This document shows, in pieces, positions 41,893 through 54,141 of a stretch of 54,141 nt of DNA (position 1 is the stretch's first letter; each line of letters opens with the position of its first letter). The stretch covers positions 1-54,141 of the forward strand of contig FLMG01000100.1 in assembly GCA_900088475.1 (NCBI GenBank), written 5' to 3'. The position numbers were made by a program, and so were the translations under genes. This stretch comes from Hyphochytrium catenoides (lineage: Eukaryota > Protista > Hyphochytriomycota). The notes beneath the pieces were generated by a model. The model ran no database searches, was not told where the DNA came from, and was given only the letters and a program-made list of their open reading frames with translations.

Positions 41893-43409
41893 ATGGCGTC
41901 GGTTATTGAGGCTGCTGAGCAACGCACCCAGACCTATGTTGATAGGATCAAGAGGAGTCGAGGTAACCTGACCGCTCACATATCTGAATTTCTGTTTCAC
42001 GTGCTCACACCTTCTTCACAGCTAGTTGTGTGACGAAGACGGACGTCCCGAAAGACATCTTCCACTACACCACAAAGCACGTTGGAAAGGTGAAGGATCT
42101 TCATACACATTCGCCTTCTTGACGGTGCGAGAGCTCATGACCATATCCACTATCCACTGCTCAGGTCCGAGATATCTACTCTGGTCCTGAGAAGGTTCTC
42201 CTCATCTCAACGGACCGTCAAAGCGCCTTTGACCGCCATCTGGCTTCAATCCCATTCAAGGGTCAGGTCCTGAACTCCACCAGGTAACAAACCATCTCTT
42301 CCATGTCGGCCTACAATCACTAATCATCGATGCCGGTGGCAGTGCCTGGTGGTTTGAGCAGACCAAACATATAACCAAGAATCATGTCATCGCTGTGCCG
42401 CACCCATCTGTCACTGTGGGCAGGAAATGCACCATCTTTCCCGTCGAGTTCGTCATGAGAGGCTACCTCACTGGATCAACGAATACCTCTATTCTCACAC
42501 ATTACACTAAAGGTGAGCATACACGTCGGCAACTCCTCTTACTTTGCTAGATCTTTGATGACGGTCATATCATTCATTCCGCCTTTCTTCTGGCTGTCCC
42601 GAGGTATATAGTAATTGGTTGTCATGCTCCTTCTTCTCTTGCAGGTGCACGGAGCTACTGTGGCCACCAACTGCCTGATGGGTTAAAGAAAAGCCAAAAG
42701 CTCCCACAGAACCTTCTGACACCTACTACTAAGGATGATACTCACGACGAACGTAAGCCTTCTCTTTTTGACACAAGCTGCTTCGAGGACTTTGACCTTT
42801 GGACTCGCTGTACTAACCCCTGTAATCCTCTCTCTAGTCATTAGCGCTGAAGAAATAGTCGCCTCGGGACGTATGTCCAAGGAAGACTGGGAGGAATGTG
42901 CTCGTATATCACATGCGCTCTTCAGCTATGGACAAGAGGTCGCTGCCTCTCGGGGACTGATCTTGGTGGACACGAAGTAAATCTGACATGAGAGGTCTTC
43001 GATCGCGTTGAAAATGACCTGACACCTCGTATTCTCTCATTTTTTCCTTCCCTTTCCTAGGTATGAATTTGGGAAAGACAGTGACGGGAACATCCTACTG
43101 GTTGATGAGATTCACACGCCTGACAGCAGTAGATATTGGCTGGCTGGCACTTATGATGAGAAGTTTGCAAAGGGTGAAGCTCCAGATAACATCGACAAAG
43201 AGTTTCTCCGCCTGTGGTTCAAGGAGCATTGTGACCCCTACAAGGACGAAGTCCTCCCAGTTGCTCCTGAGAGCCTGGTGGTTGAGCTGTCTCGGCGCTA
43301 TATCCTACTCTACGAGTTGATAACAGGTCAGCTCTTCCCTTTCCCAGCCTCCGATGAGGTCGATGAGCACACCCGAATAGTGGAGAGCCTGAGAGCGTTG
43401 AGCCACTGA
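41893..43409 (+). CDS. purC: Phosphoribosylaminoimidazole-succinocarboxamide (SAICAR) synthetase (multi-exon)
   Basis: GK|VRDIY, TDRQSAFDR, IPFKGQVLN, PVEFVMRGYLTGS, TPTTK, LILVDTK|YEFG, DEIHTPDSSRYW and DKEFLRLW; ATG 41893, TGA 43407-43409. Confidence 0.96.
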
Positions 43410-44085: not shown

Positions 44086-47000
44086 ATGGCAGCGTCTTCA
44101 GAGGCATACGATCAGTTCCCAGAAGATGCCTTCACGGCGCTGGAGGAGGCACGAGGGACAGCTGATGAGGAGCTAAGCAGAACGGAGTTCTACAGTGCAG
44201 GCGGCAACTTTCTTCTCAGTCATCCGGAGCATTGGTGGTGCCGGTACCCCCAGCTAATGACGGAAATGACGCGGGTTTTGGAGTTTGTGAACCAGCAGCC
44301 GAGTATTGACAGTCTTTGGCGTCAGATGTCCTTGCAGCTTCTCGCCTGTACAGCTTGCATTGACCAGCTGCATCAGGGGATAGACACGCTGAAGGCGATG
44401 TTTGAAGAGACCTACACACCAGAGTCCTGCTCCGTCTTCTTTAGTCATTTGACAGAGCTTGAACATGCCCGGCTGGGTTCTGCACTGTACAAGATAGTTG
44501 AGCCATCGAGCAAGGAGAGTCTTCGCTTCCAGGAGTCTGCTCCAGCCTTAATGTCAGTACTGGAGCAGTCGGAGATCCCAGACGTCATTGGGGCTCGATT
44601 GCATATTGTCTATGAGTTACTTCGCTACCCGTTGGCTATGGAGAACATGTTCATTAGGGAGCTCTTCTGCGCTCTTCTGCTAGACCTTCAGGAAAAAGAC
44701 AGAGAGGATAGCAGCGGCAACAGTGCCTTTGAGATAGAATTCGGGGGAGGAGGGCCTCGCATTTGGCCAGGCGTCTATCTTCTTCTCATGAACCCGCATC
44801 CAGGCATCCGCTTCTGGTCCCAGTTGAATATGAAGCGACTAGGCCCATTAAGAAAGATAGACTTGGAAGGTGAAGACAATGTGCTTCTGCGCATTGTGGA
44901 GCAATGGATGAAACTCTTGGAGTTTGACCTCTTCGAGACCCGAGCGTCCCAAGGACCTGAAGCTCTCTCGCGAGGTCTTACCGTGGCCATCCCTACCCGA
45001 AGAGAGTTCTGGTCTTCTCTAAACTTTCTGATGATGCAGGCAGACGCACACGCTCTCTTGGTTCTCCTCGAGAAGTTTCCAGACCTCGTGGATATTATCT
45101 TCAACCATGTGATCAGCACGGGAATACCTTTAGCACTTCCCTCAGAGCCTAAGAGCGCTGCACCCGAGGAGAATGACTGCTCATCTGAAGGGGTGAAGCT
45201 CATTCTTCAGATCTGCCGCTGCTGCTGTATCACATTGGACACTCTGGACTATCGGGTGTGGACACAGACTTCTTTTTCTCCTCAGAGCATCGTCATGGGC
45301 ATCTTCAGGAGCTGCACTCTCACCAACCAGTTAGTTGCGAAGAGCTATTTAGAGGTCCTCTGCAGCCTCTACCGCAGCTTGGACATGTATCAAGCAGAAG
45401 AGGGCGAAGGAGAAGAGACCTTGGACGGGCTAGGCCCCAAGATCGTGAGCTTTCTCTGTGATCTCTGCACCAGGATTCCACCACCAGGCAGTCTTGTGCG
45501 CTCTGCCGCCACCCAGGTGCTAGTCAAGATTTTGACCAGTATGACAACCTCACCGGACGTGGGAAACTATCTCAGGCGGTTGCCGTTGGCCAATGTTGCC
45601 ATATGGGGCAAGTTTATCGCTTCCGTAGCATGTTCAAGGTAAGATTCTCGAATAGGCAGGGAAGAGATAGGAAAGCGGGCCGCCAGAGAAAATTGGCTGA
45701 AAGCGGGAGAATTAGAAGAGAGTGGGCTAAATAGAGGAGAGTGGGGGAGCAAACGGAGGGCAGCGTACCAAAGAAGAGACTCAGGGGGAGCTCTGAAATT
45801 GGAACTCACCCACCATATTAGAGAGATGGCGATGCCCTGGCCCTAACTTATAATCATACAACCATGTAGGCAGTTCCATCCATCAATTACTCAAGACACA
45901 GTGAAGCTAGTGTGCAACTTGATGGCTTTACACGCCAAGAACTTTCCGAGCTATCTCTCCTTACAAGCCAAAGCCATGGAAGAGGGCCAAAGCGTGCCTT
46001 CCACCGCATCTGATACGACCAACTGGCTTCTTCTCCCACTATATGAAGAGGTCTGTGAGGGCACAGATGTCGCCAACATCCCTGTCAAGTTACACGTTGC
46101 CCTCTTCGATGCCCTCAGCACTCTCTCTCAAGCCATCCATTCAGAAGAGCTATTTATTTGCGTTAACGCCTGTGGAGAGGCACCTGAAAACTCTCTTACA
46201 TCGTTTCATGCAGAGGCACTATCTGCAGTCCATCGATACCGAGGCTTAGTAGTGTCCTACCTTGCTCGAGTGAAAGATGGTATCGAACAATCACGATTGA
46301 AGACTCCTCTGTCCCTTCCTGCAGTCGTTCCTTCTCTTTTCCTCGTTCTATGTCTGCCTCTTGACAATCGTATCATGGCTCTGCTTCGGAACCTCTTGGT
46401 AAACATGGAGCTCAAGGGAACAGCTGTAGGAAGGAGCAGCTGGATGGAAGCTCTGCTTCTTCTTCTTCTCTCCGGCCCTCCGGGCAGCTGGCTGAGAGTT
46501 ATTACAAAGCTCTTAGAGTTTTTAGCCACAAACCCGCGATTAGAGGTGCTAGGGAGCCATGTAAGTACCCTTTCCTTGTTTCTTGAGCATCTGTTCTCTA
46601 CGTCGTACTTTCTGAGGGACGTACTACCCGCTGGCCATATGAAGGAGGAGCGGAAGGACAGTGGAGAAGGACAACAGAGTTCTGCCGACAAGTCAACCAA
46701 GCCGCTATTGGAACTCATTCAACAGTATCGTGCAGCAATCCGTTCTGCAATCTCTCCGCCCGGGCTTTCCACGTCCAACTTTGTTGAGAAGCAGGAAGAA
46801 GACGCAACATGTCCGGGAACTGGGGAGGAGCTTCTTTGTGCTTATGCGGAGCTCGTTGCTCGCGTTCTCCGCTTACCAGCAGATGGTAGGGTCCCCACGG
46901 CTGGTCTTTCATCCGTGCCTGTCGTCAGGGTGCTTGACAGTCTTCTGGCACTCCTGCGCGGGTCGCAAAGACCCAAATCGCAACCAGGCAAGACGTTCTG

Positions 47001-50000
47001 CTCCCTGTTTCATGACGAACCGACGCTATCGGCTTGGCTAGAAGTCATGATGCGCTGGAGTTATTGCCCGGCGCCCGAGATTCGGAGACGCTCTTTGGAC
47101 TTGGTTGTCCTTATTCTTGAGGTTAATAGAAGGAGAGAGAAGAGAGAAGGACGCACTACGAGACCTGGGGTGCGGACAACCTTCCCCTTATCTGTAAAGC
47201 ACCACCTGAAAGAGCTGATCGAGAGCCAGGAACTGGGAGCGGAATGGAAGATAAAGATTGGTCAATTGGTCCCTGAAGTGGCACCAGGAAATTTAGGAGC
47301 CGCGTGGCATGAGGGTCTGGCCGGACAAGGGGATGAGGACGTGATGCCGGTAGATATGCATGAGAAAGAAGACGAAGAGGACGAGGAACTTGACGTAGGA
47401 GAAGCCTCTGTTTCCTCCCCCGTGACGCCAGACGGGCACATCGTGGACTTGACACTGGAGGAGGACGGAAATTCGGCATCGCCAAAGGGGCTGCCTTCCC
47501 CTTCTGGAGCTCTTGGGGCTTCCAGACAGTCAGCGGTTATATCAGAAGTGGCCAGACGAGAGAGCCACCTAGCTGAGTCTGCTCCGGGACTTAACGTTGT
47601 TGGCATTGGTAGTGATGGGCCAGTTGACCCGATAGAAAAGATATGGAAAGAGCTGCAGGAGGACCAGCAAATCGCTGAATATAAAGCCAAGCACCGGATA
47701 GTGCTAGGATTGGAAAGGAAGGCTCAGCCCGCGGTGAGCTCCCCTTGCTTCCACTGTCTGACCCCTATTGCACTAGACTTTCGCTAGTATCCTCAGTAGC
47801 TGACGCTGGGTCTAAAATCTTCCCTTAACCTCAAGCTGCTGCCACCTGAACTTATTCTGTACAGTATAGCGTTGAGTCGCTTCTACTCGGCTATTCTCTT
47901 TGGCATCTCGAAGCCCATCTATGTCTCTTAGCTCCACTTTAATCGCCAGCTACTAACCGTTGTGCCTATCTCCTCAGAGACTGTCTCTGCCGTACCAAAA
48001 GGAGATTGCGGCTTCACTGGGCGGGCGGCCAGCTCCACAAGCGACGTCTGTGCAGACCAACAAGCCAGCAAGAGCTGGACCGGAGATTAGAAGCAGTAAA
48101 TACCGGCCCTTTGTCATTCCCCCTCCTACTACTTCGTCCTCGTCATCCGCCCCCGAGATCTCTGTTCGGGACTTTCACCGACAGATCATGGATTGGAAGG
48201 TCACAGATATTCAGCGTCCATTGCGTGACCTTCCGGAGCTCCATTCTGAGTTCAGGACGGCCGAAAGCTATGTCCAGGCTTGGCAGCCACTGCTCTTTGA
48301 AGAGGCTCGAGCGGTGTTGCTTAAAGGCTGGGAGGAGTGTGAGAGAGGAAGAACGCGGCCAGTCAGGGCGAAGCTGACCGACCTGTTGGGTGTAGAAGAG
48401 TTTGTCCTCTTGGACTTCTTTCTCTGTGAGTGACTACCATGCTCAGGCGGACTAGGTCCTACTGTTAACCTATTCTCTCCATTCCTTCGGCTCCCAGCTC
48501 ATCTTAGTTCTCCTAACTGGCAGCAGCAGCTGTCTCGTTTGTCGCTCATTCTGTCGTAACGACCCCGGCGGTGCTTTCTACCTCCCTTCCTCTCCGCCGT
48601 CACCCTGGCAGGACCGCGTCTCATGATCTTCAACTCGTAAAGCTCTTCTGGTGTCCTCTCCGCTCTCCCTTCCTTTTCGTTATCGCACTCTTTCGAAGAA
48701 AATTTATTGTTTATCAAGTATACTAACCTGCGTGTGACGTTGTGTCTCTAGTAAACGACGGTATGGTATCGGAGAGGGGTACCAAGGGCAGGAAAGACGG
48801 CGGATCGGCTATGCCGCTCTTCGGACACGATGTGATCCTCCTTCTCCCATTAGCGGCGGGACAACCGCCAAAGAAGCTGTCTCTGCCAGAGGTAACCCCC
48901 CAAAACAAGTCTAGTGGGCGCTTACCAGCCCCATGTCAAGCCTTCAATCTCTCCCTTTCACCTCTACCCTGCTTCTATTCGTGCTTATACTAAGTGCCGC
49001 CCTCTCTTTGTTGCCCTCTTCTCACAGCTTACGAGGTCCTCACACTTTCTGGGCATCGTTGATCGTGATGACAGCTTAGCGGTTGACATAGAGATTGCTA
49101 ATAGGAAAAAAAATAGAGATAACAAAGCCAACGGAGGAAAAGGAGAGAAAACTAAGCCGAGAGCGAGACATGACGATGGATCGGTTAGAATTCGAATCCT
49201 TCAGAGCGCTGTTGAGAGCCAAGACATTGACTTGGCCGCTAGGCAGCGACCAGGTAGCGGGGAGTGGCTGCTGGTTCGATTGGAGAGTATCGCCACAATA
49301 GGAAGAGAGTTTGTGGCTCTTCACTCTCTAGGAAAAGTCCCTGATCAGGTGCGCACCACAATTGTTCGCCCTCGCTCCGTAGTGTTACACTACCAGCTCG
49401 GGCTGCATACTGAGAACACCAAGATTCTTCTGAAGAAGTTGAGAAGTTTGACTACCGAAGGAGGGAGTGCTGCCAAGGTTAGGACGTCTATCTATTATTT
49501 TCCGTCTTGCTCTTCTTTTCGTTTAGGTGTTGTCGCAGAACATTGTGAACGTTATTAAGTCCTGCACCTTGGCTGCTCTCCTCCCTGCCAATCATACTGA
49601 ATATTGCGCAGGAGAAGAGCAAGCAGAGGAGTGATGAGAGAGAGAAACTCCGTGAGAAGACCAAGAATCGAGAGACGAAGAACGGCTCTTCAAGTTCTGA
49701 GGAACAGATCCTGCAAATTTTGGCTGATCTGAGAGAGATTCCTATGACTATCTCCATCCTCAAGGTACAGCTTGCTTCCCTTATCCTAGCTTGTCCTCAA
49801 GTTCTTCTCCGCTCATTCTGACTATACGTCGTTCCTGGGCTATTGCGTTCGGGCTTCCTGGGCTGTCGGGTGCATCTTATAGGAGACAGGAGCCGGCATC
49901 GCTATGACCAATCTGAAGAAGAGTAGCAAGCTCAAGGAAGTGCAGCGCTGCGCTGAGGAGTTAATTGCGAAATGGAAGCAAGTGCTCAACGAGGAGGAAG

Positions 50001-53000
50001 ATGGGGAAGGGAAGGACGGAGGAAAGAAGGAGTCACCAAAAGCGTCGTCTCTGGCGTCTCCCGCCGAGGTTCCTCAGAAGCTCTGGGATAAGCTCAAAGA
50101 TCACTTCAATGCCTCACAGATGAGGGCAGTTCATGCAGCCTGCAGCGGCCCCAAACAGAGGGCAAGTGGCTTCACGCTCCTACAGGGACCGCCAGGAACT
50201 GGTAGGAACATAATGACATTTGTAGAGAGAAGAGAAAGACACAGAGATTGGCTTGTATGTGACATCCTTCTCTGACTGACTGAGATCTGCAGGTAAGACA
50301 AAGACCATTCTAGGTATTCTCAGCGCTTTCCTGGGATCGGTAAAGTCGCCTGAGCAACCCACAGTTAGTCCAACGCCCGCGAAGAGGTAGGAGATGCTAT
50401 GCTACGCAGTTGCTCTCCGTTGCTCTCCGTGCTTTATAAACCTCCTAGTTATTCGTCTATTCCTGACATTTGCTTTGTTATGCTATTGGGTTTCCCTTCC
50501 TCTATACTTCATTCTTTCTATCGTTGCCTCTCCGGTCCGGCCTCGCTGAACCTATCCACGAACTCTCTATGACAGGATCGTACCTGGGGCGTCTCTTAAC
50601 GTGCCCACTTCCGGTTCTTCGGCCACCCATAGTGGCCGCAGCCTTTCAGCTTCCCCGTCATCCACAACATCGTCGTCCTTTAGCAGTAACCATCCGCGTA
50701 TTCTACTCTGCGCCCCGTCTAATGGCGCTGTAGATGAGTTGGTTCTCCGCATCTTACGAGATGGGCTCTACAATCGCACAGGAGCTAACTTCAAGCCCGT
50801 CCTTGTCCGTTTAGGGCACATTGGAGAAGATGCTCACGAGGTGGTACGAGGCTGTGCCTTGGAAGTCCTGGTAGAGAAGCAGTTGGGCAACCATCCGAGC
50901 CAGTCTCTCCTCTCAGCGGTAGAGAAAGAAGCTCAGGAGTTAAGGGAGAAACTGGACAGAATCGGTGCAGAAATCAGTAGAACTTCGGAATCTTTGTACA
51001 GCGGTAAAAGCTCAGCGCCCTCTCAAGAAGTTGAGGAAGGAGAAGAGGATGGAAGTGCAGATATGAAGGACAAGCTCAGTCTTCTTCACAGCCGTCAGGC
51101 GGCTCTCTCCACGGCCCTGTCACAATGCACTGCCAGGAAGAGAGACGCTATGAATCAACTCCGTGCTGCACGAGACCGTCTCCGACGGTCCACGCTCTCC
51201 TCCGCCTCTGTCATCTGTTCCACTCTCGCTACGTCTGGCGGAGACGTCCTCCACAACTATCCTCATCCTTTCCAGGCACTCATCATCGATGAGGCGGCGC
51301 AAGCGGTGGAGGTGTCTACCCTTATCCCTATGAGACTTAAAATCAAGCACGTTGTTCTGGTCGGAGATCCCCGACAGCTGCCTGCTACGGTTATTTCATC
51401 CATCAATAGCGAGAACAAATATGAGCGGTCTCTCTTTGAAAGATTAGAGAGCACTGGCCATCCTGTGACGATGCTGACAATGCAGTATCGCATGTGTCCT
51501 CGCATCAGAGAGTTCCCCTCCCAGCAGTTCTACGGGAACCTTCTCTGTGATGGGGAGAATGTCCAGAGCGCGGCGTACCAGAATCGACCATTCCATAAAA
51601 TCCTTCCTTTCTTTGATCAGTTCGTCTTTTTTAACGTAAAGGACGGCAGAGAGCTGAGGAGGATGGGAGGAGGTGGAGCTGAAGCAGGGCAGAGTACCAG
51701 TATCAGGAACGACGTAGAGGCAAACTTCGTTCTCTCTCTCTGCGACTTGCTCTTCTCGTCCTGTCCAGAAGTCCGCCGGCCCGGCCATGTGGGAGTCATT
51801 TCTCCTTATAAAGATCAAGTGTTAGCCCTCCGCCGCCGACTGAGAGAGACTCGCTTCCAGGGTCTGGAGGGGCAAAAACTCGTCGAAGTCAACACTGTGG
51901 ACGGATTCCAGGTAAGCAACGAGAACAAGACGTTAGCTGGATAAGACCTTCTTTATGCGCTTTAGCGCTCTTTGTCCTGTCAGTCTCTTGCAGGTGCTGC
52001 ATAGAAACGCGATGTGTCTTGATCCTTGCATTGGACGCTCTGTTCGCTCGATATGCATCGCTCTCTCTATCTTACTCTCTTTATCTTGCTGAGTAACTCT
52101 TTGCTGATCTAGGGCCGAGAGAAGGACATTATTATCTTTTCCTGCGTCCGCACTGAGACTCGCGGGTCTATCGGCTTCCTTGCTGATGTGCGGCGCTTAA
52201 ATGTGGCTATAACTCGTGCTCGGCACTCGCTTCTTTTGGTGGGCTCTGCCGCAGCCCTTTCTCAGCATCAGACCTGGAGCCTACTGCTCCGCCACGCCCT
52301 AGCAGCAGGAGAGGTCGTTGTCGTGACCGGAGACTCGGTACCTGGGGCTCAAAAGTTCTCGGGCAGCTATGAGGAGCTGACAGCAGGGGGAGGAAGGCAT
52401 AAAGAGAGAGATAAGAAGCGGGATGGGGGCGATCGAAGAGGGCCACATCTGTTTTCAGGGAGGACGGGTGAGGCACATAGTCAACCGCCCCATTTAAGGC
52501 ACCAACGGCCAGGAGAGAGACAGACTCCGGACCTCCAGGGACCTTTAGTAAACGGAAGAGGGAGGAGCCCTAGCCATTCCGGCAACAGGGAAGACGAGGA
52601 CAGAAGAAGATATAGGCCGGGAAGAGGAAGGAGCCGAAGTCCTACAAGGCCAGCGGGCTTTGAAGGGCAAGGTGGTAGAGGGAGAGAACAGGAGAGAGAA
52701 AGACCAGAGTCAGCAGGAGTTAGAGAGACAAGAAGTAGAAGAAGTCAGGAGAGAGGACGAGATCCTCAAGGAAGGTCGGCTGCACCAGGACACCGAGATT
52801 TGGGCAGGATGAAGAACTCGCTAGGCCCTGGAAAGCCCTATGATCCTCGGGATCCGCCTGCCAGGGAACAGGCCGAGAGATCGAGGCCGCGGCAGGTAGA
52901 GATCGGCCAGGTAGCAAGAGCAGATGGACGCCGGTGGTCCGGGGGTGAAAGAGGGAGAATGCTCTCAGGAAGAGGGACTGGACGGTCACCAAGCGCGCAG

Positions 53001-53417
53001 CTGACAAACACTGGAGAAGCAAGGCACCCAGGCCACCAAGGACGGGAGATTGCCACGTCTAGAGAACCGCCACGCGGTAGGGCCCTGGGTATGAGGTCAG
53101 CCCAGGCAGCTATACCTCGGCGGACTGCGGGCAGAGAAGGCACAGAAGACAAAAAAGATAGAGGCGGTCCTCTTGGCTCTTTGAGAAGACCGTTGTCAAG
53201 GGAGGAAAGAGACAAGGAACAGGAGCATCTCAGAAGAAAGAAGAGGAGAATGGAACTGGTCGGGGCCGGCGCTTCTCGTCAAGAAAAGGATGGAAGTGCA
53301 GGCGGCGACGTGCTGTCCTCAATCCTCTCAGGAATATCTGAGCTGCAGTCCTCTGAATCCAAGGCAAGGTCTGAGCTAGAGAGGAAAGGAGTATACCAGG
53401 GAGGGTCAGAGTGGTGA
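44086..53417 (+). CDS. SEN1: Sen1/senataxin-like SF1B (Upf1-like) RNA/DNA helicase with helical N-terminal domain, embedded TFIIS-N domain and R/G-rich tail (multi-exon)
   Basis: HWWC N-terminal motif; FRTAESYVQAWQPLLFEEARA; LQGPPGTG|KT; LLCAPSNGAVDE; IIDEAAQA; LVGDPRQLPATV; QYRM; TVDGFQ|GREKD; RRLNVAITRAR. Start uncertain (a possible upstream exon ends near 43950). Confidence 0.92.
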
Positions 53418-53430
53418 GAGAGAGACAGAG

Positions 53431-53470
<40 letters not shown>
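53415..53470. repeat. (GA)n microsatellite
   Basis: Near-perfect GA run directly after the Sen1 stop. Confidence 0.9.
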
Positions 53471-53473
<3 letters not shown>

Positions 53474-53852
53474 GAACTGTACATAGTGAGACAGAGATAG
53501 ATAGGTATCCAGATGGAGACCACAGGGTATCGGGCGAGATGACCCCATCTCATTTCTGCTTTCTCTCTCCTCCCACGACCAAACCAAAGATTCTTCTGTC
53601 TCCCCAACTCTTTTCTTTTTGTTTTTATGGAGATTAGCTGCTGTGAGAAGCACAGGAGGCCAATCGCTAGAGGTAACAGACAGAATAAATAGATAGATTG
53701 AAAGTGACACGTGGCTCTTTGAGGTTGAAAGCCAGAGGATTAGAAGATTAAGAGAGACAGAGGGAGAGAGAAAGTGTGACCTATGGAACTTTTAGACATT
53801 CTCTCCCAGCCCCTCGAGTATAGTAGGAGAGAGAGAAAGAAGAGAGACAGAG

Positions 53853-54013
53853 TCATGAAGAGGAAGGACTGAACGATAGATGTTTCCTGGTGTAGTCGAT
53901 AACCTCACTCTCTCTCACGAGATCATAGTCCTCAAGGATCCGCACCAAGCGATCCGCGGCCTCCAACCGCTCACGGAGGATTCGTGCTCGCCGCTTACTC
54001 ATCTCCTTGTCAC
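53853..54013 (-). CDS. Probable terminal exon of a gene extending beyond the right edge
   Basis: A CT-rich acceptor ...CTTTCAG precedes an open frame DKEMSKRRARILRERLEAADRLVRILEDYDLVRESEVIDYTRKHLSFSPSSS*. Confidence 0.5.
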
Positions 54014-54016
54014 CTG

Positions 54017-54141
54017 AAAGAGAGAGAGAGAGAGGAGAAAAATTAGCTCTCTTCTTGTTTGCCTTCTCTTGTCCCGCTGCTTCTTTTTACCTCTCTCTCT
54101 CTCTCGCGCGCGCGCTCTTTCTCTCTCTTTCTCTCTCTCTC
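54017..54141. repeat. GA/CT microsatellites (likely intronic)
   Basis: (GA)n and (CT)n runs. Confidence 0.8.

What the first reader, a model, noticed from the sequence alone, without database searches (positions are those of the whole stretch)
49700..49990. Sen1/senataxin helicase with an embedded TFIIS N-terminal (TND/LW) domain just before Walker A
Seen: two exons splice to LQILADLREIPMTISILK|ETGAGIAMTNLKKSSKLKEVQRCAEELIAKWKQVL. This closely follows the TFIIS-N/Elongin A/MED26/IWS1 consensus (L..L...PMT...L..T.IG..V..L.K......V...A..LI..WK..L). It lies between the beta-barrel/stalk region and the FNASQ...LQGPPGTGKT motifs. Known: TNDs bind TIM motifs in Pol II elongation factors (Spt6, IWS1, PAF1 complex), and yeast Sen1 and human SETX lack a TND. 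Inferred: this lineage recruits its termination/R-loop helicase to elongating Pol II directly through a TND-TIM interaction, an Nrd1/Nab3-independent route.
Basis: partly seen in the sequence, partly recalled or inferred. Interest (0 to 1): 0.75.

Follow-up and report, generated by a model that had tools for sequence, protein, structure and literature searches.

The report
Termination helicase with built-in docking domain
This protist's Sen1/senataxin helicase, the motor that makes RNA polymerase II stop, has a small protein-docking domain of the kind found in elongation factor TFIIS inserted just before its motor; water moulds and some golden-brown algae share this layout, no searched paper discusses it, and it hints at a different way of bringing the helicase to the polymerase.

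Summary
A 10-exon, GT-AG-spliced gene (44086-53417, + strand, 2,553 codons) encodes a Sen1/SETX orthologue with SEN1_N, AAA_11 and AAA_12 domains and intact helicase motifs. Exons 6 and 7 carry the quoted peptides. Exon 7 alone passes Pfam's threshold for PF08711 (TFIIS-N/Med26). A profile built only from relatives hits exactly these two exon pieces among 1,773 ORF pieces of the window, at abutting profile positions.

The domain is a roughly 150-residue insertion between the barrel/stalk motif and motif Q. Fungal, animal, plant, amoebozoan and apicomplexan Sen1 lack it.

It is not private to this lineage. About 45 oomycete Sen1 proteins have it and are auto-named "TFIIS N-terminal domain-containing protein". 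So do Spumella and several environmental eukaryotes; Phaeothamnion and Ectocarpus have degenerate versions. An orthologue's insert folds as a five-helix bundle matching human TFIIS TND (Z 13.2, 1.9 Å). The family profile hits TFIIS TNDs at E 4e-13.

No RNA run was listed, so splicing is inferred. I found no paper linking Sen1 with a TND. Recruitment to elongating Pol II through TND-TIM contacts is plausible but untested. Rating: a new variant of a known kind, of moderate interest.

The parts
44086..53417 (+). Whole Sen1/SETX-like gene. Ten exons: 44086-45638, 45870-47733, 47978-48425, 48752-48891, 49028-49477, 49612-49764, 49883-50201, 50293-50386, 50576-51911, 52113-53417. 2,553 codons plus stop.
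   Evidence: All nine introns are GT..AG and 91-326 nt long. Phases are consistent and no exon has an internal stop (with exon 9 corrected to end at 51911). The gene is co-linear with oomycete Sen1 proteins by tblastn.
44314..45123 (+). SEN1_N domain (PF12726) in exon 1
   Evidence: 54.4 bits against a cut-off of 24.7, E 9.5e-15
49304..49321 (+). Stalk motif REFVAL at the end of the 1B barrel region (exon 5)
   Evidence: Aligns with the (T)xxREYxAL motif of all Sen1 homologues. In K. phaffii Sen1 the Pfam SEN1_barrel ends at about this motif.
49409..49450 (+). Candidate helix alpha-1 of the TND (TENTKILLKKLRSL), at the end of exon 5. Inferred only.
   Evidence: An amphipathic pattern like alpha-1 of TFIIS and the oomycete inserts. 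Neither profile detected it.
49612..49764 (+). Exon 6: a charged loop followed by TND helices alpha-2 and alpha-3 (up to IPMTISILK)
   Evidence: The relatives-only HMM hits 49645-49764 at profile positions 19-50, E 8e-4. Aligned with the orthologues in A1 and A2.
49765..49882 (+). Phase-0 intron splitting the TND between alpha-3 and alpha-4
   Evidence: GTACAG...TTATAG, 118 nt, with an in-frame stop if retained
49883..49987 (+). First part of exon 7: TND helices alpha-4 and alpha-5, with the Leu/Trp signature LIAKWKQVL
   Evidence: PF08711 27.2 bits, above the cut-off of 20.6. Relatives-only HMM profile 52-87, E 4.7e-6. The best PDB matches by sequence are TFIIS N-terminal domains.
49988..50104 (+). 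Acidic/Lys/Ser-rich linker, then the helix preceding motif Q (PQKLWDKLKDH)
   Evidence: Aligns with the P..LW...YNxSQ block of all Sen1 homologues. The orthologue model is disordered in the linker.
50105..50201 (+). Motif Q (FNASQ) and the first part of Walker A (GPPGTG), at the end of exon 7
   Evidence: AAA_11 starts at exon-7 residue 74. Coordinates.
50293..50386 (+). Exon 8: completes Walker A (GKT) and adds the start of RecA1
   Evidence: Phase arithmetic and translation; tblastn to the orthologues
50576..51911 (+). Exon 9: helicase core with motifs II (DEAAQ), III (GDPRQLP) and the start of V (TVDGFQ)
   Evidence: AAA_11 182.9 bits and AAA_12 119 bits. Translation.
52113..53417 (+). Exon 10: end of AAA_12 (motifs V and VI, 52113-52250), then a roughly 375-residue Arg/Gly-rich disordered tail
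   Evidence: AAA_12 67.5 bits. The tail is 18% R and 15% G, with no Pfam hit.

Best explanation
The gene encodes the organism's Sen1/senataxin orthologue, an apparently catalytically intact SF1B 5'-3' helicase. A complete or near-complete TFIIS-type N-terminal domain (TND, a five-helix bundle) has been inserted into the surface linker that joins the 1B barrel/stalk to RecA1. The insert is tethered at its C-terminal side by a disordered acidic/Lys/Ser-rich linker. Those points are shown here. The following is inferred. As in TFIIS, IWS1, Elongin A, MED26 and PNUTS, the TND acts as a landing pad for short disordered TND-interacting motifs (TIMs). Because it resembles TFIIS's own TND most closely, its likely ligands are the TIMs that TFIIS reads, in IWS1, LEO1 and PAF1, or in SPT6. 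This would dock the termination helicase on the Pol II elongation complex and give stramenopiles a built-in recruitment device, in place of or beside the adaptor route (Nrd1-Nab3) that budding yeast uses. The insertion is old: oomycetes and ochrophytes share it and it has been kept under purifying selection.
For: Sen1 identity: SEN1_N, AAA_11 and AAA_12 hits; motifs Q, I, II, III, V and VI are readable; the gene is co-linear with oomycete Sen1; the helicase core groups with the TND-bearing oomycete and P0010 Sen1 set (support 96/95).

TND identity: PF08711 is above threshold on exon 7 alone. The two exon pieces are the only window hits to a relatives-only profile, and they fall at abutting positions. 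The family profile A2 hits TFIIS TNDs at E 4e-13, Elongin A at 4e-10, MED26 at 3e-9, PNUTS at 5e-6 and IWS1 at 7e-5. An AF2 model of the Saprolegnia orthologue insert has five helices at pLDDT 81-91. All of the top ~38 Foldseek hits are TND/LW domains. VIA-align gives Z 13.2, 1.9 Å over 80 of 81 residues to human TFIIS TND, and Z 13.1 to the yeast LW domain.

Insertion site: the stalk motif lies 40-80 residues from Walker A in most homologues, about 150 in oomycetes and about 204 here.

Conservation: the architecture is present in roughly 45 oomycete proteins, in Spumella, Phaeothamnion and Ectocarpus sp. 6, and in the environmental P0010, P0013 and P0022. TND identity between distant oomycetes is 32-41%, similar to SEN1_N and above the middle region.

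Integral to the protein: in P0013 and P0010 the TND and Walker A lie in one uninterrupted ORF.

Function of TNDs: they read TIMs, and the TFIIS TND binds IWS1, LEO1 and PAF1 (PMC9987994). The Lys-Lys at the end of alpha-4 aligns with the Arg-Lys of TFIIS.
Against: No RNA run was listed, so the splice junctions and inclusion of exon 6 are inferred. Exon 6 is 153 nt with phase 0 at both ends, so skipping it would stay in frame. Helix alpha-1 of the window's own TND was not detected by any profile. The structural match was obtained on an orthologue, not on the window's joined peptide. No TIM-bearing partner was identified. The TND is degenerate in Phaeothamnion (13.4 bits) and Ectocarpus (family HMM 10 bits), and divergent in a Saprolegnia paralogue in which Pfam finds no Med26 match though the family alignment and profile, which were built with it, include it. 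Another Saprolegnia paralogue lacks it. It is therefore dispensable in some contexts. The TFIIS TND has also been linked to nuclear targeting and pre-initiation complex formation, so elongation-complex docking is not the only precedent.
Confidence: 0.55

Rival explanations
1. The TND is a real domain but docks Sen1 to something other than the elongation complex. Candidates include a PP1/PNUTS-like termination phosphatase module, Mediator or pre-initiation factors, chromatin or DNA-repair proteins, or the nuclear import machinery.
For: TNDs bind many different partners. The TFIIS TND was linked to nuclear targeting and PIC assembly, and the PNUTS TND acts in a termination phosphatase complex. 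Unchecked scan notes report TFIIS-N fused to a Set1-type methyltransferase and to SPT2 in this genome, which suggests a broadly reused module.
Against: The family profile is closest to TFIIS's own TND, whose known ligands are elongation factors. Sen1 acts on transcribing Pol II.
Confidence: 0.2
2. The TND works inside the protein. It either binds a motif in Sen1's own disordered regions (autoinhibition or gating of the helicase) or simply braces the barrel/stalk against RecA1.
For: It sits next to the regulatory 1B barrel/stalk. The protein has long disordered segments, including a 375-residue Arg/Gly-rich tail.
Against: No FxGF or similar TIM-like motif was found in any exon. The tail is basic, not acidic as TIM linkers are. 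The orthologue model shows a disordered linker between the TND and RecA1, as expected of a tethered module rather than a brace.
Confidence: 0.1
3. The TND is a gene-model artefact or a decaying relic in this organism: the exons are skipped or non-functional in the mature mRNA.
For: There are no RNA data. Exon 6 could be skipped in frame. Alpha-1 is undetected. Some relatives have degenerate copies.
Against: Exon 7 also carries motif Q and half of Walker A, so it cannot be skipped. Both TND exon pieces are open, in phase, flanked by canonical splice sites, and match abutting parts of the profile. The PF08711 score is above the curated threshold. The domain is conserved across very distant relatives.
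Confidence: 0.05

Closest known systems
Yeast Sen1 / human senataxin (SETX), SF1B Upf1-like helicases (structures 5MZN, 8RAM)
   Same: SEN1_N domain, barrel/stalk motif, motif Q, Walker A, DEAAQ, motifs V and VI, and a long disordered C-terminal tail. Overall co-linearity.
   Different: Yeast and vertebrate proteins have 40-80 residues between the stalk motif and Walker A and no TND. Here about 204 residues, including a TND, are inserted. Pfam SEN1_barrel is not detected in the window.
TFIIS N-terminal domain (domain I / LW domain; 6ZUY, 7FAW, 1WJT)
   Same: Best sequence-profile and structural match: E 4e-13; Z 13.2, 1.9 Å, 31% identity for the orthologue model. Shares the Leu/Trp signature and basic residues at the end of alpha-4.
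   Different: It is embedded in the middle of a helicase rather than at the N-terminus of a cleavage-stimulating factor. In the window it is split by at least one intron and carries a roughly 35-residue charged loop before alpha-2.
Oomycete Sen1 orthologues auto-named 'TFIIS N-terminal domain-containing protein' (e.g. Aphanomyces invadans RHY32097.1 / A0A3R6VE27, Saprolegnia SDRG_03866, Phytophthora, Albugo F0WQJ9)
   Same: Identical architecture, SEN1_N + TND + AAA_11 + AAA_12, with the TND at the same insertion point.
   Different: Only about 37-39% identical in the helicase core. The window's insert is longer. These entries carry automatic names only; I found no paper discussing them.
PNUTS (PPP1R10)-PP1, a termination-linked factor carrying a TND
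   Same: A precedent for a Pol II termination component that uses a TND as its docking module.
   Different: PNUTS is a phosphatase-targeting subunit, not a helicase. Its TND is a weaker match (E 5e-6) than that of TFIIS.

Membership tests
Sen1/SETX helicase (SF1B, Upf1-like) | N-terminal SEN1_N domain (PF12726) | tested here: met
   54.4 bits against a cut-off of 24.7 on exon 1
Sen1/SETX helicase (SF1B, Upf1-like) | AAA_11 + AAA_12 core with motifs Q, I, II, III, V and VI intact | tested here: met
   AAA_11 182.9 bits; AAA_12 119 and 67.5 bits. FNASQ, GPPGTG|KT, DEAAQ, GDPRQLP, TVDGFQ|GREKD and RRLNVAITRAR are read.
Sen1/SETX helicase (SF1B, Upf1-like) | 1B beta-barrel and stalk preceding RecA1 | tested here: inconclusive
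   Pfam SEN1_barrel and the PDB sequence search found nothing in exons 3-5. The stalk motif REFVAL aligns with all homologues, and the region is co-linear with oomycete Sen1.
Sen1/SETX helicase (SF1B, Upf1-like) | Groups with Sen1 orthologues in a tree of helicase cores | tested here: met
   The window's exon 9 falls in a 96/95-supported set with oomycete Sen1 and P0010
Sen1/SETX helicase (SF1B, Upf1-like) | 5'-3' RNA/DNA:RNA unwinding and Pol II termination activity | not testable with these tools
   Needs biochemistry or genetics
TFIIS N-terminal domain (TND; PF08711 / PS51319) | Profile match above the curated threshold | tested here: met
   Exon 7 alone scores 27.2 bits against 20.6. The joined peptide was not scanned.
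TFIIS N-terminal domain (TND; PF08711 / PS51319) | Right-handed five-helix bundle | tested here: inconclusive
   Met for the orthologue P0036. For the window, alpha-2 to alpha-5 are placed by alignment and profile, but alpha-1 is only a candidate at 49409-49450, and the joined peptide could not be folded.
TFIIS N-terminal domain (TND; PF08711 / PS51319) | Conserved core including the Leu...Trp signature of alpha-5 | tested here: met
   LIAKWKQVL aligns with LIKSWKKLL of TFIIS. The Trp and the core Leu residues are nearly invariant in A2.
TFIIS N-terminal domain (TND; PF08711 / PS51319) | Basic patch and hydrophobic pockets that read TIMs | tested here: inconclusive
   The Lys-Lys at the end of alpha-4 aligns with the Arg-Lys of TFIIS, and the relatives keep K/R there. 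The pocket residues were not mapped on a ligand complex.
TFIIS N-terminal domain (TND; PF08711 / PS51319) | Binding of a TIM peptide | not testable with these tools
   No multimer prediction or binding assay was available, and partner genes lie outside the window

The most novel reading that the evidence does not exclude
Because the inserted domain resembles TFIIS's own TND most closely, stramenopile Sen1 may compete with TFIIS for the same TIM tethers on IWS1 and PAF1C. At a paused or backtracked Pol II, the choice between rescue (TFIIS) and removal (Sen1) would then be made by which TND occupies the tether. This would be an adaptor-free, Nrd1/Nab3-independent termination pathway conserved across oomycetes and ochrophytes.
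Probability: 0.15. Interest if true: 0.75.

Novelty: new variant of a known kind. Interest (0 to 1): 0.5.

Why it matters
How Sen1/senataxin finds transcribing Pol II is well worked out only in budding yeast, where it uses Nrd1-Nab3 and CTD contacts (my own knowledge, not checked here). Outside fungi the question is open. A TND hard-wired into the helicase, in a large and old eukaryotic group that includes major plant and fish pathogens and many algae, gives a concrete and testable recruitment hypothesis. It also adds an enzyme, a helicase, to the short list of TND-bearing proteins; the 2023 TND review never mentions the word helicase. Finally, it shows that the linker between stalk and RecA1 of Upf1-like helicases tolerates a whole inserted domain.

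Tried and rejected
1. RNA evidence. The look-up of sequencing runs listed no run for 47900-52200 (the first attempt found the machine busy), so read laying could not be used.

2. The big representative search with exon 7 found no close orthologue (best E 3e-7). Most hits covered only motif Q and Walker A, but it did yield the first TND-bearing relatives (P0010, P0013, P0014, P0022).

3. Exon 6 alone gives no Pfam Med26 hit, because it covers only about 17 profile positions.

4. Single-sequence PDB searches were weak. Exon 7 matched TFIIS at E 0.3 and exon 5 matched nothing relevant. The family profile was needed.

5. Foldseek E-values were only about 1e-2 for this small helical domain. VIA-align gave clearer Z scores.

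6. One Pfam call exceeded the residue limit and was resent with sub-ranges.

7. A regex scan for FxGF or TIM-like motifs within the Sen1 exons found nothing.

8. A single origin of the insertion could be neither shown nor excluded. The tree needs 2-3 changes of the TND label, and the ochrophyte TND clade sits in an unresolved polytomy.

9. I rejected the idea that brown algae lack the domain. The Ectocarpus fasciculatus protein first seen (P0031) is a TND-less paralogue. The long Ectocarpus sp. 6 protein (P0294) has a degenerate TND at the homologous place.

10. All window searches were made exon by exon, by reference.

11. The organism was not identified. Scan notes call it a protist or stramenopile, and the tree is consistent with a stramenopile outside the oomycetes.
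Full report
THE OBSERVATION

The peptide ending in IPMTISILK ends at 49764 and is followed by GTACAG. The peptide starting ETGAGIAMT begins at 49883 after TTATAG and runs through LIAKWKQVL to 49987. The intervening 118 nt form a phase-0 GT..AG intron, which contains an in-frame stop if retained.

Exon 7 on its own (108 residues, given by reference) scores 27.2 bits against Pfam PF08711 (Med26 / TFIIS helical bundle-like). This is above the curated cut-off of 20.6 and covers profile positions 18-51 of 52. The same exon then begins AAA_11. Exon 6 is too short a piece of the domain for Pfam.

To test both halves and the chance level, I built an HMM of the homologous insert from 31 relatives, leaving the window out. 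I searched it against all 1,773 stop-to-stop ORF pieces of the whole window on both strands. Only two pieces scored below E=1:
- the exon-7 piece (profile 52-87, E 4.7e-6);
- the exon-6 piece (profile 19-50, E 8e-4).

These are consecutive parts of one domain that meet at the predicted splice junction. The next hit has E 2.1.

THE GENE

Stop-to-stop frames, canonical splice sites and phase arithmetic give a 10-exon gene from the ATG at 44086 to the stop at 53415-53417. It has 2,553 codons and nine GT..AG introns of 91-326 nt, and no exon has an internal stop. Exon 9 ends at 51911, not 51912 as first typed.

Domain and motif content:
- Exon 1 carries SEN1_N (54.4 bits). Exons 7, 9 and 10 carry AAA_11 (182.9 bits) and AAA_12 (119 and 67.5 bits).
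- Motifs Q (FNASQ), I (GPPGTG|KT, split by an intron), II (DEAAQ), III (GDPRQLP), V (TVDGFQ|GREKD) and VI (RRLNVAITRAR) are all intact.
- The last ~375 residues are an Arg/Gly-rich tail with no Pfam family.

By tblastn, oomycete Sen1 proteins align co-linearly with exons 1, 2, 5, 7, 8, 9 and 10. This is the organism's Sen1/senataxin orthologue, and it looks catalytically competent.

WHERE THE DOMAIN SITS

All Sen1 homologues share a stalk motif, (T)xxREYxAL, at the end of the 1B barrel. In K. phaffii Sen1 the Pfam SEN1_barrel ends at about this motif, and AAA_11 starts 50 residues later. The motif is followed after 40-80 residues by P..LW...YNxSQ and Walker A.

In the window the motif is REFVAL at 49304-49321, and Walker A starts at 50186. 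That is about 204 residues later, counted over exons 5-7. The extra length is the TND plus linkers. A disordered acidic/Lys/Ser-rich stretch (49988 to about 50080) separates it from the helix before motif Q.

Pfam's SEN1_barrel itself was not detected in the window and a PDB sequence search of exon 5 found nothing relevant, so the barrel is inferred from co-linearity.

Helices alpha-2 and alpha-3 are in exon 6, and alpha-4 and alpha-5 are in exon 7. Alpha-1 was not detected by any profile. An amphipathic segment at the end of exon 5 (49409-49450) is my candidate, and it would be followed by a ~35-residue charged loop. This is inference.

IS IT REALLY A TND?

Alignment A2 holds the insert region of 31 relatives plus the two window exon pieces as separate rows. 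As a profile against all PDB sequences it hits:
- TFIIS N-terminal domains at E 4e-13 to 1e-12 (1WJT, 6ZV4, 7CNF, 6ZUY), over all five helices;
- Elongin A at 4e-10;
- MED26 at 3e-9;
- PNUTS at 5e-6;
- IWS1 at 7e-5;
- HRP2 at 4e-4.

With its C-terminal part the same profile hits yeast Sen1 (5MZN, 8RAM) at motif Q.

AlphaFold2 on the Saprolegnia diclina orthologue segment (P0036:1273-1446, with A2 as its alignment) gives five helices at residues 38-118 with block pLDDT of 81-91, followed by a disordered linker. All of the top ~38 Foldseek hits are TND/LW/IBD domains. VIA-align gives Z 13.2, rmsd 1.9 Å, 80 of 81 residues and 31% identity to human TFIIS TND, and Z 13.1 to the yeast LW domain.

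The tool warns that helical bundles reach Z of about 13 fairly easily. The weight therefore lies on the combination with the sequence-profile E-values and on the fact that the hits are almost exclusively TNDs.

That step is referred.

WHO ELSE HAS IT

The big representative search with exon 7 found no close orthologue, but it returned four proteins whose match extends into the TND. One is Aphanomyces invadans RHY32097.1, which carries SEN1_N + Med26 (44.6 bits) + AAA_11 + AAA_12, and which UniRef names 'TFIIS N-terminal domain-containing protein'.

Using it as a query, about 45 oomycete proteins show the same architecture in their precomputed Pfam lists. They come from Aphanomyces, Saprolegnia, Achlya, Thraustotheca, Phytophthora, Nothophytophthora, Plasmopara, Bremia, Peronospora, Hyaloperonospora, Peronosclerospora, Pythium, Globisporangium, Lagenidium and Albugo. 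One Plasmopara entry is even named 'putative transcription factor IIS, P-loop containing nucleoside triphosphate hydrolase'.

Outside oomycetes the insert is present in:
- the chrysophyte Spumella vulgaris (P0151, Med26 20.1 bits);
- Phaeothamnion confervicola (P0154, 13.4 bits, degenerate);
- the long Ectocarpus sp. 6 protein (P0294, family HMM 10 bits, with a readable L..L...ELL...G.G.A.K.LK...W pattern);
- environmental contigs (P0010, P0013, P0022).

In P0013 and P0010 the TND and Walker A lie in one uninterrupted ORF, so in those organisms no splicing choice can remove it.

In the homologues sampled here, the insert is absent from Sen1/SETX of fungi (including S. pombe and K. phaffii, and full-length S. 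cerevisiae Sen1 in 8RAM), vertebrates, plants, green and red algae, Cyanophora, amoebozoans, apicomplexans, Chromera, Plasmodiophora and Guillardia. It is also absent from a separate TND-less Sen1-like paralogue clade of ochrophytes: Ectocarpus fasciculatus P0031, Pedospumella and chrysophyte H1.

In a maximum-likelihood tree of helicase cores, the window's exon 9 lies in a 96/95-supported set with oomycete Sen1 and P0010. The ochrophyte TND trio is a 98/95 clade in an unresolved position. The TND label needs 2-3 changes, so one ancient gain with later losses is compatible with the tree but not shown.

Between Saprolegniales and Peronosporales/Albugo, the TND keeps 32-41% identity. That is similar to SEN1_N (22-45%) and above the middle region (23-30%), which indicates purifying selection.

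HOW IT PROBABLY WORKS

TNDs have no known catalytic activity. They read short disordered TIMs (an amphipathic helix plus an acidic linker, with or without FxGF) through two shallow hydrophobic pockets and a basic patch. The TFIIS TND binds TIMs of IWS1, LEO1 and PAF1 (PMC9987994). A T. brucei LW-Leo1 complex (7FAX) is among the structural hits.

The Sen1 insert is closest to TFIIS's own TND. It keeps the Leu/Trp core and basic residues at the end of alpha-4; the Lys-Lys aligns with the Arg-Lys of TFIIS. It hangs on a flexible linker.

The best-supported mechanism is therefore a built-in tether that docks the helicase on TIM-bearing elongation factors travelling with Pol II. This is inference: I identified no ligand. 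The rivals are a different partner, an intramolecular role, or a skipped or relic domain. They are listed with their tests in the rival explanations.

NOVELTY

The architecture is visible in public databases through automatic names. None of six full-text searches combining Sen1 or senataxin with TND, TFIIS or LW-domain terms, or with Phytophthora or stramenopiles, found a paper that connects the two. The 2023 TND review never mentions a helicase.

I rate it a new variant of a known kind: a Sen1 helicase with an accessory TND, conserved across stramenopiles. It is of moderate interest. The scan had noted this same stretch once before, and not on other DNA.

LIMITS

No RNA run was listed. The phyletic survey was limited by word-indexed searches and by fragmentary gene models.

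Noticed in passing
P0272 / P0303 (environmental JGI and Logan proteins; TND at residues 1208-1259 of 1261): A different Upf1/Sen1-like helicase carries a strong Med26/TFIIS-N match (40.5 bits) at its extreme C-terminus instead of before Walker A. This is either a second, independent helicase-TND combination or a read-through into a neighbouring exon or gene.
   Followed up: partly
P0298 + P0152 (Ectocarpus siliculosus CBN79686.1 and CBN79685.1) versus P0294 (Ectocarpus sp. 6, 3,127 aa): The E. siliculosus annotation splits the long Sen1 gene into two adjacent models, an N-terminal part and a helicase part. The merged Ectocarpus sp. 6 protein shows a degenerate TND about 200 residues before Walker A, near where the E. 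siliculosus models break.
   Followed up: partly
P0094 and P0085 (Saprolegnia SDRG_10664, SPRG_05631); P0031, P0304, P0188, P0169: Oomycetes and ochrophytes have extra Sen1-like paralogues. One Saprolegnia paralogue keeps a divergent TND in which Pfam finds no Med26 match, another has lost it, and ochrophytes have a well-supported TND-less clade.
   Followed up: partly
window 47951-47957 and 48720-48726: Two introns of the gene carry a perfect yeast-type branch-point TACTAAC about 20-25 nt upstream of the acceptor. A third has TACTAAG near 48987.
   Followed up: no
window 52293-53414: The C-terminal ~375 residues of the helicase are an Arg/Gly-rich (18% R, 15% G) tail with RS/RGG-like runs and no Pfam family. 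It may be an RNA-binding or condensate-forming region.
   Followed up: partly
window 43023-43406 (+): An exon just upstream of the Sen1 gene encodes the C-terminal part of a SAICAR synthetase (PF01259, 63 bits).
   Followed up: partly
window 53411-53500 and 54000-54141: (GA)n / (GAGAGA) microsatellite runs lie downstream of the gene. They translate as poly-(ER) or poly-(SL) in several frames.
   Followed up: no
same genome, other windows (scan notes s1-342059, s1-347955): First readers report TFIIS-N domains fused to a Set1-type methyltransferase and to an SPT2 histone chaperone in this genome. If true, this organism reuses the TND widely as a docking module. Not checked here.
   Followed up: no
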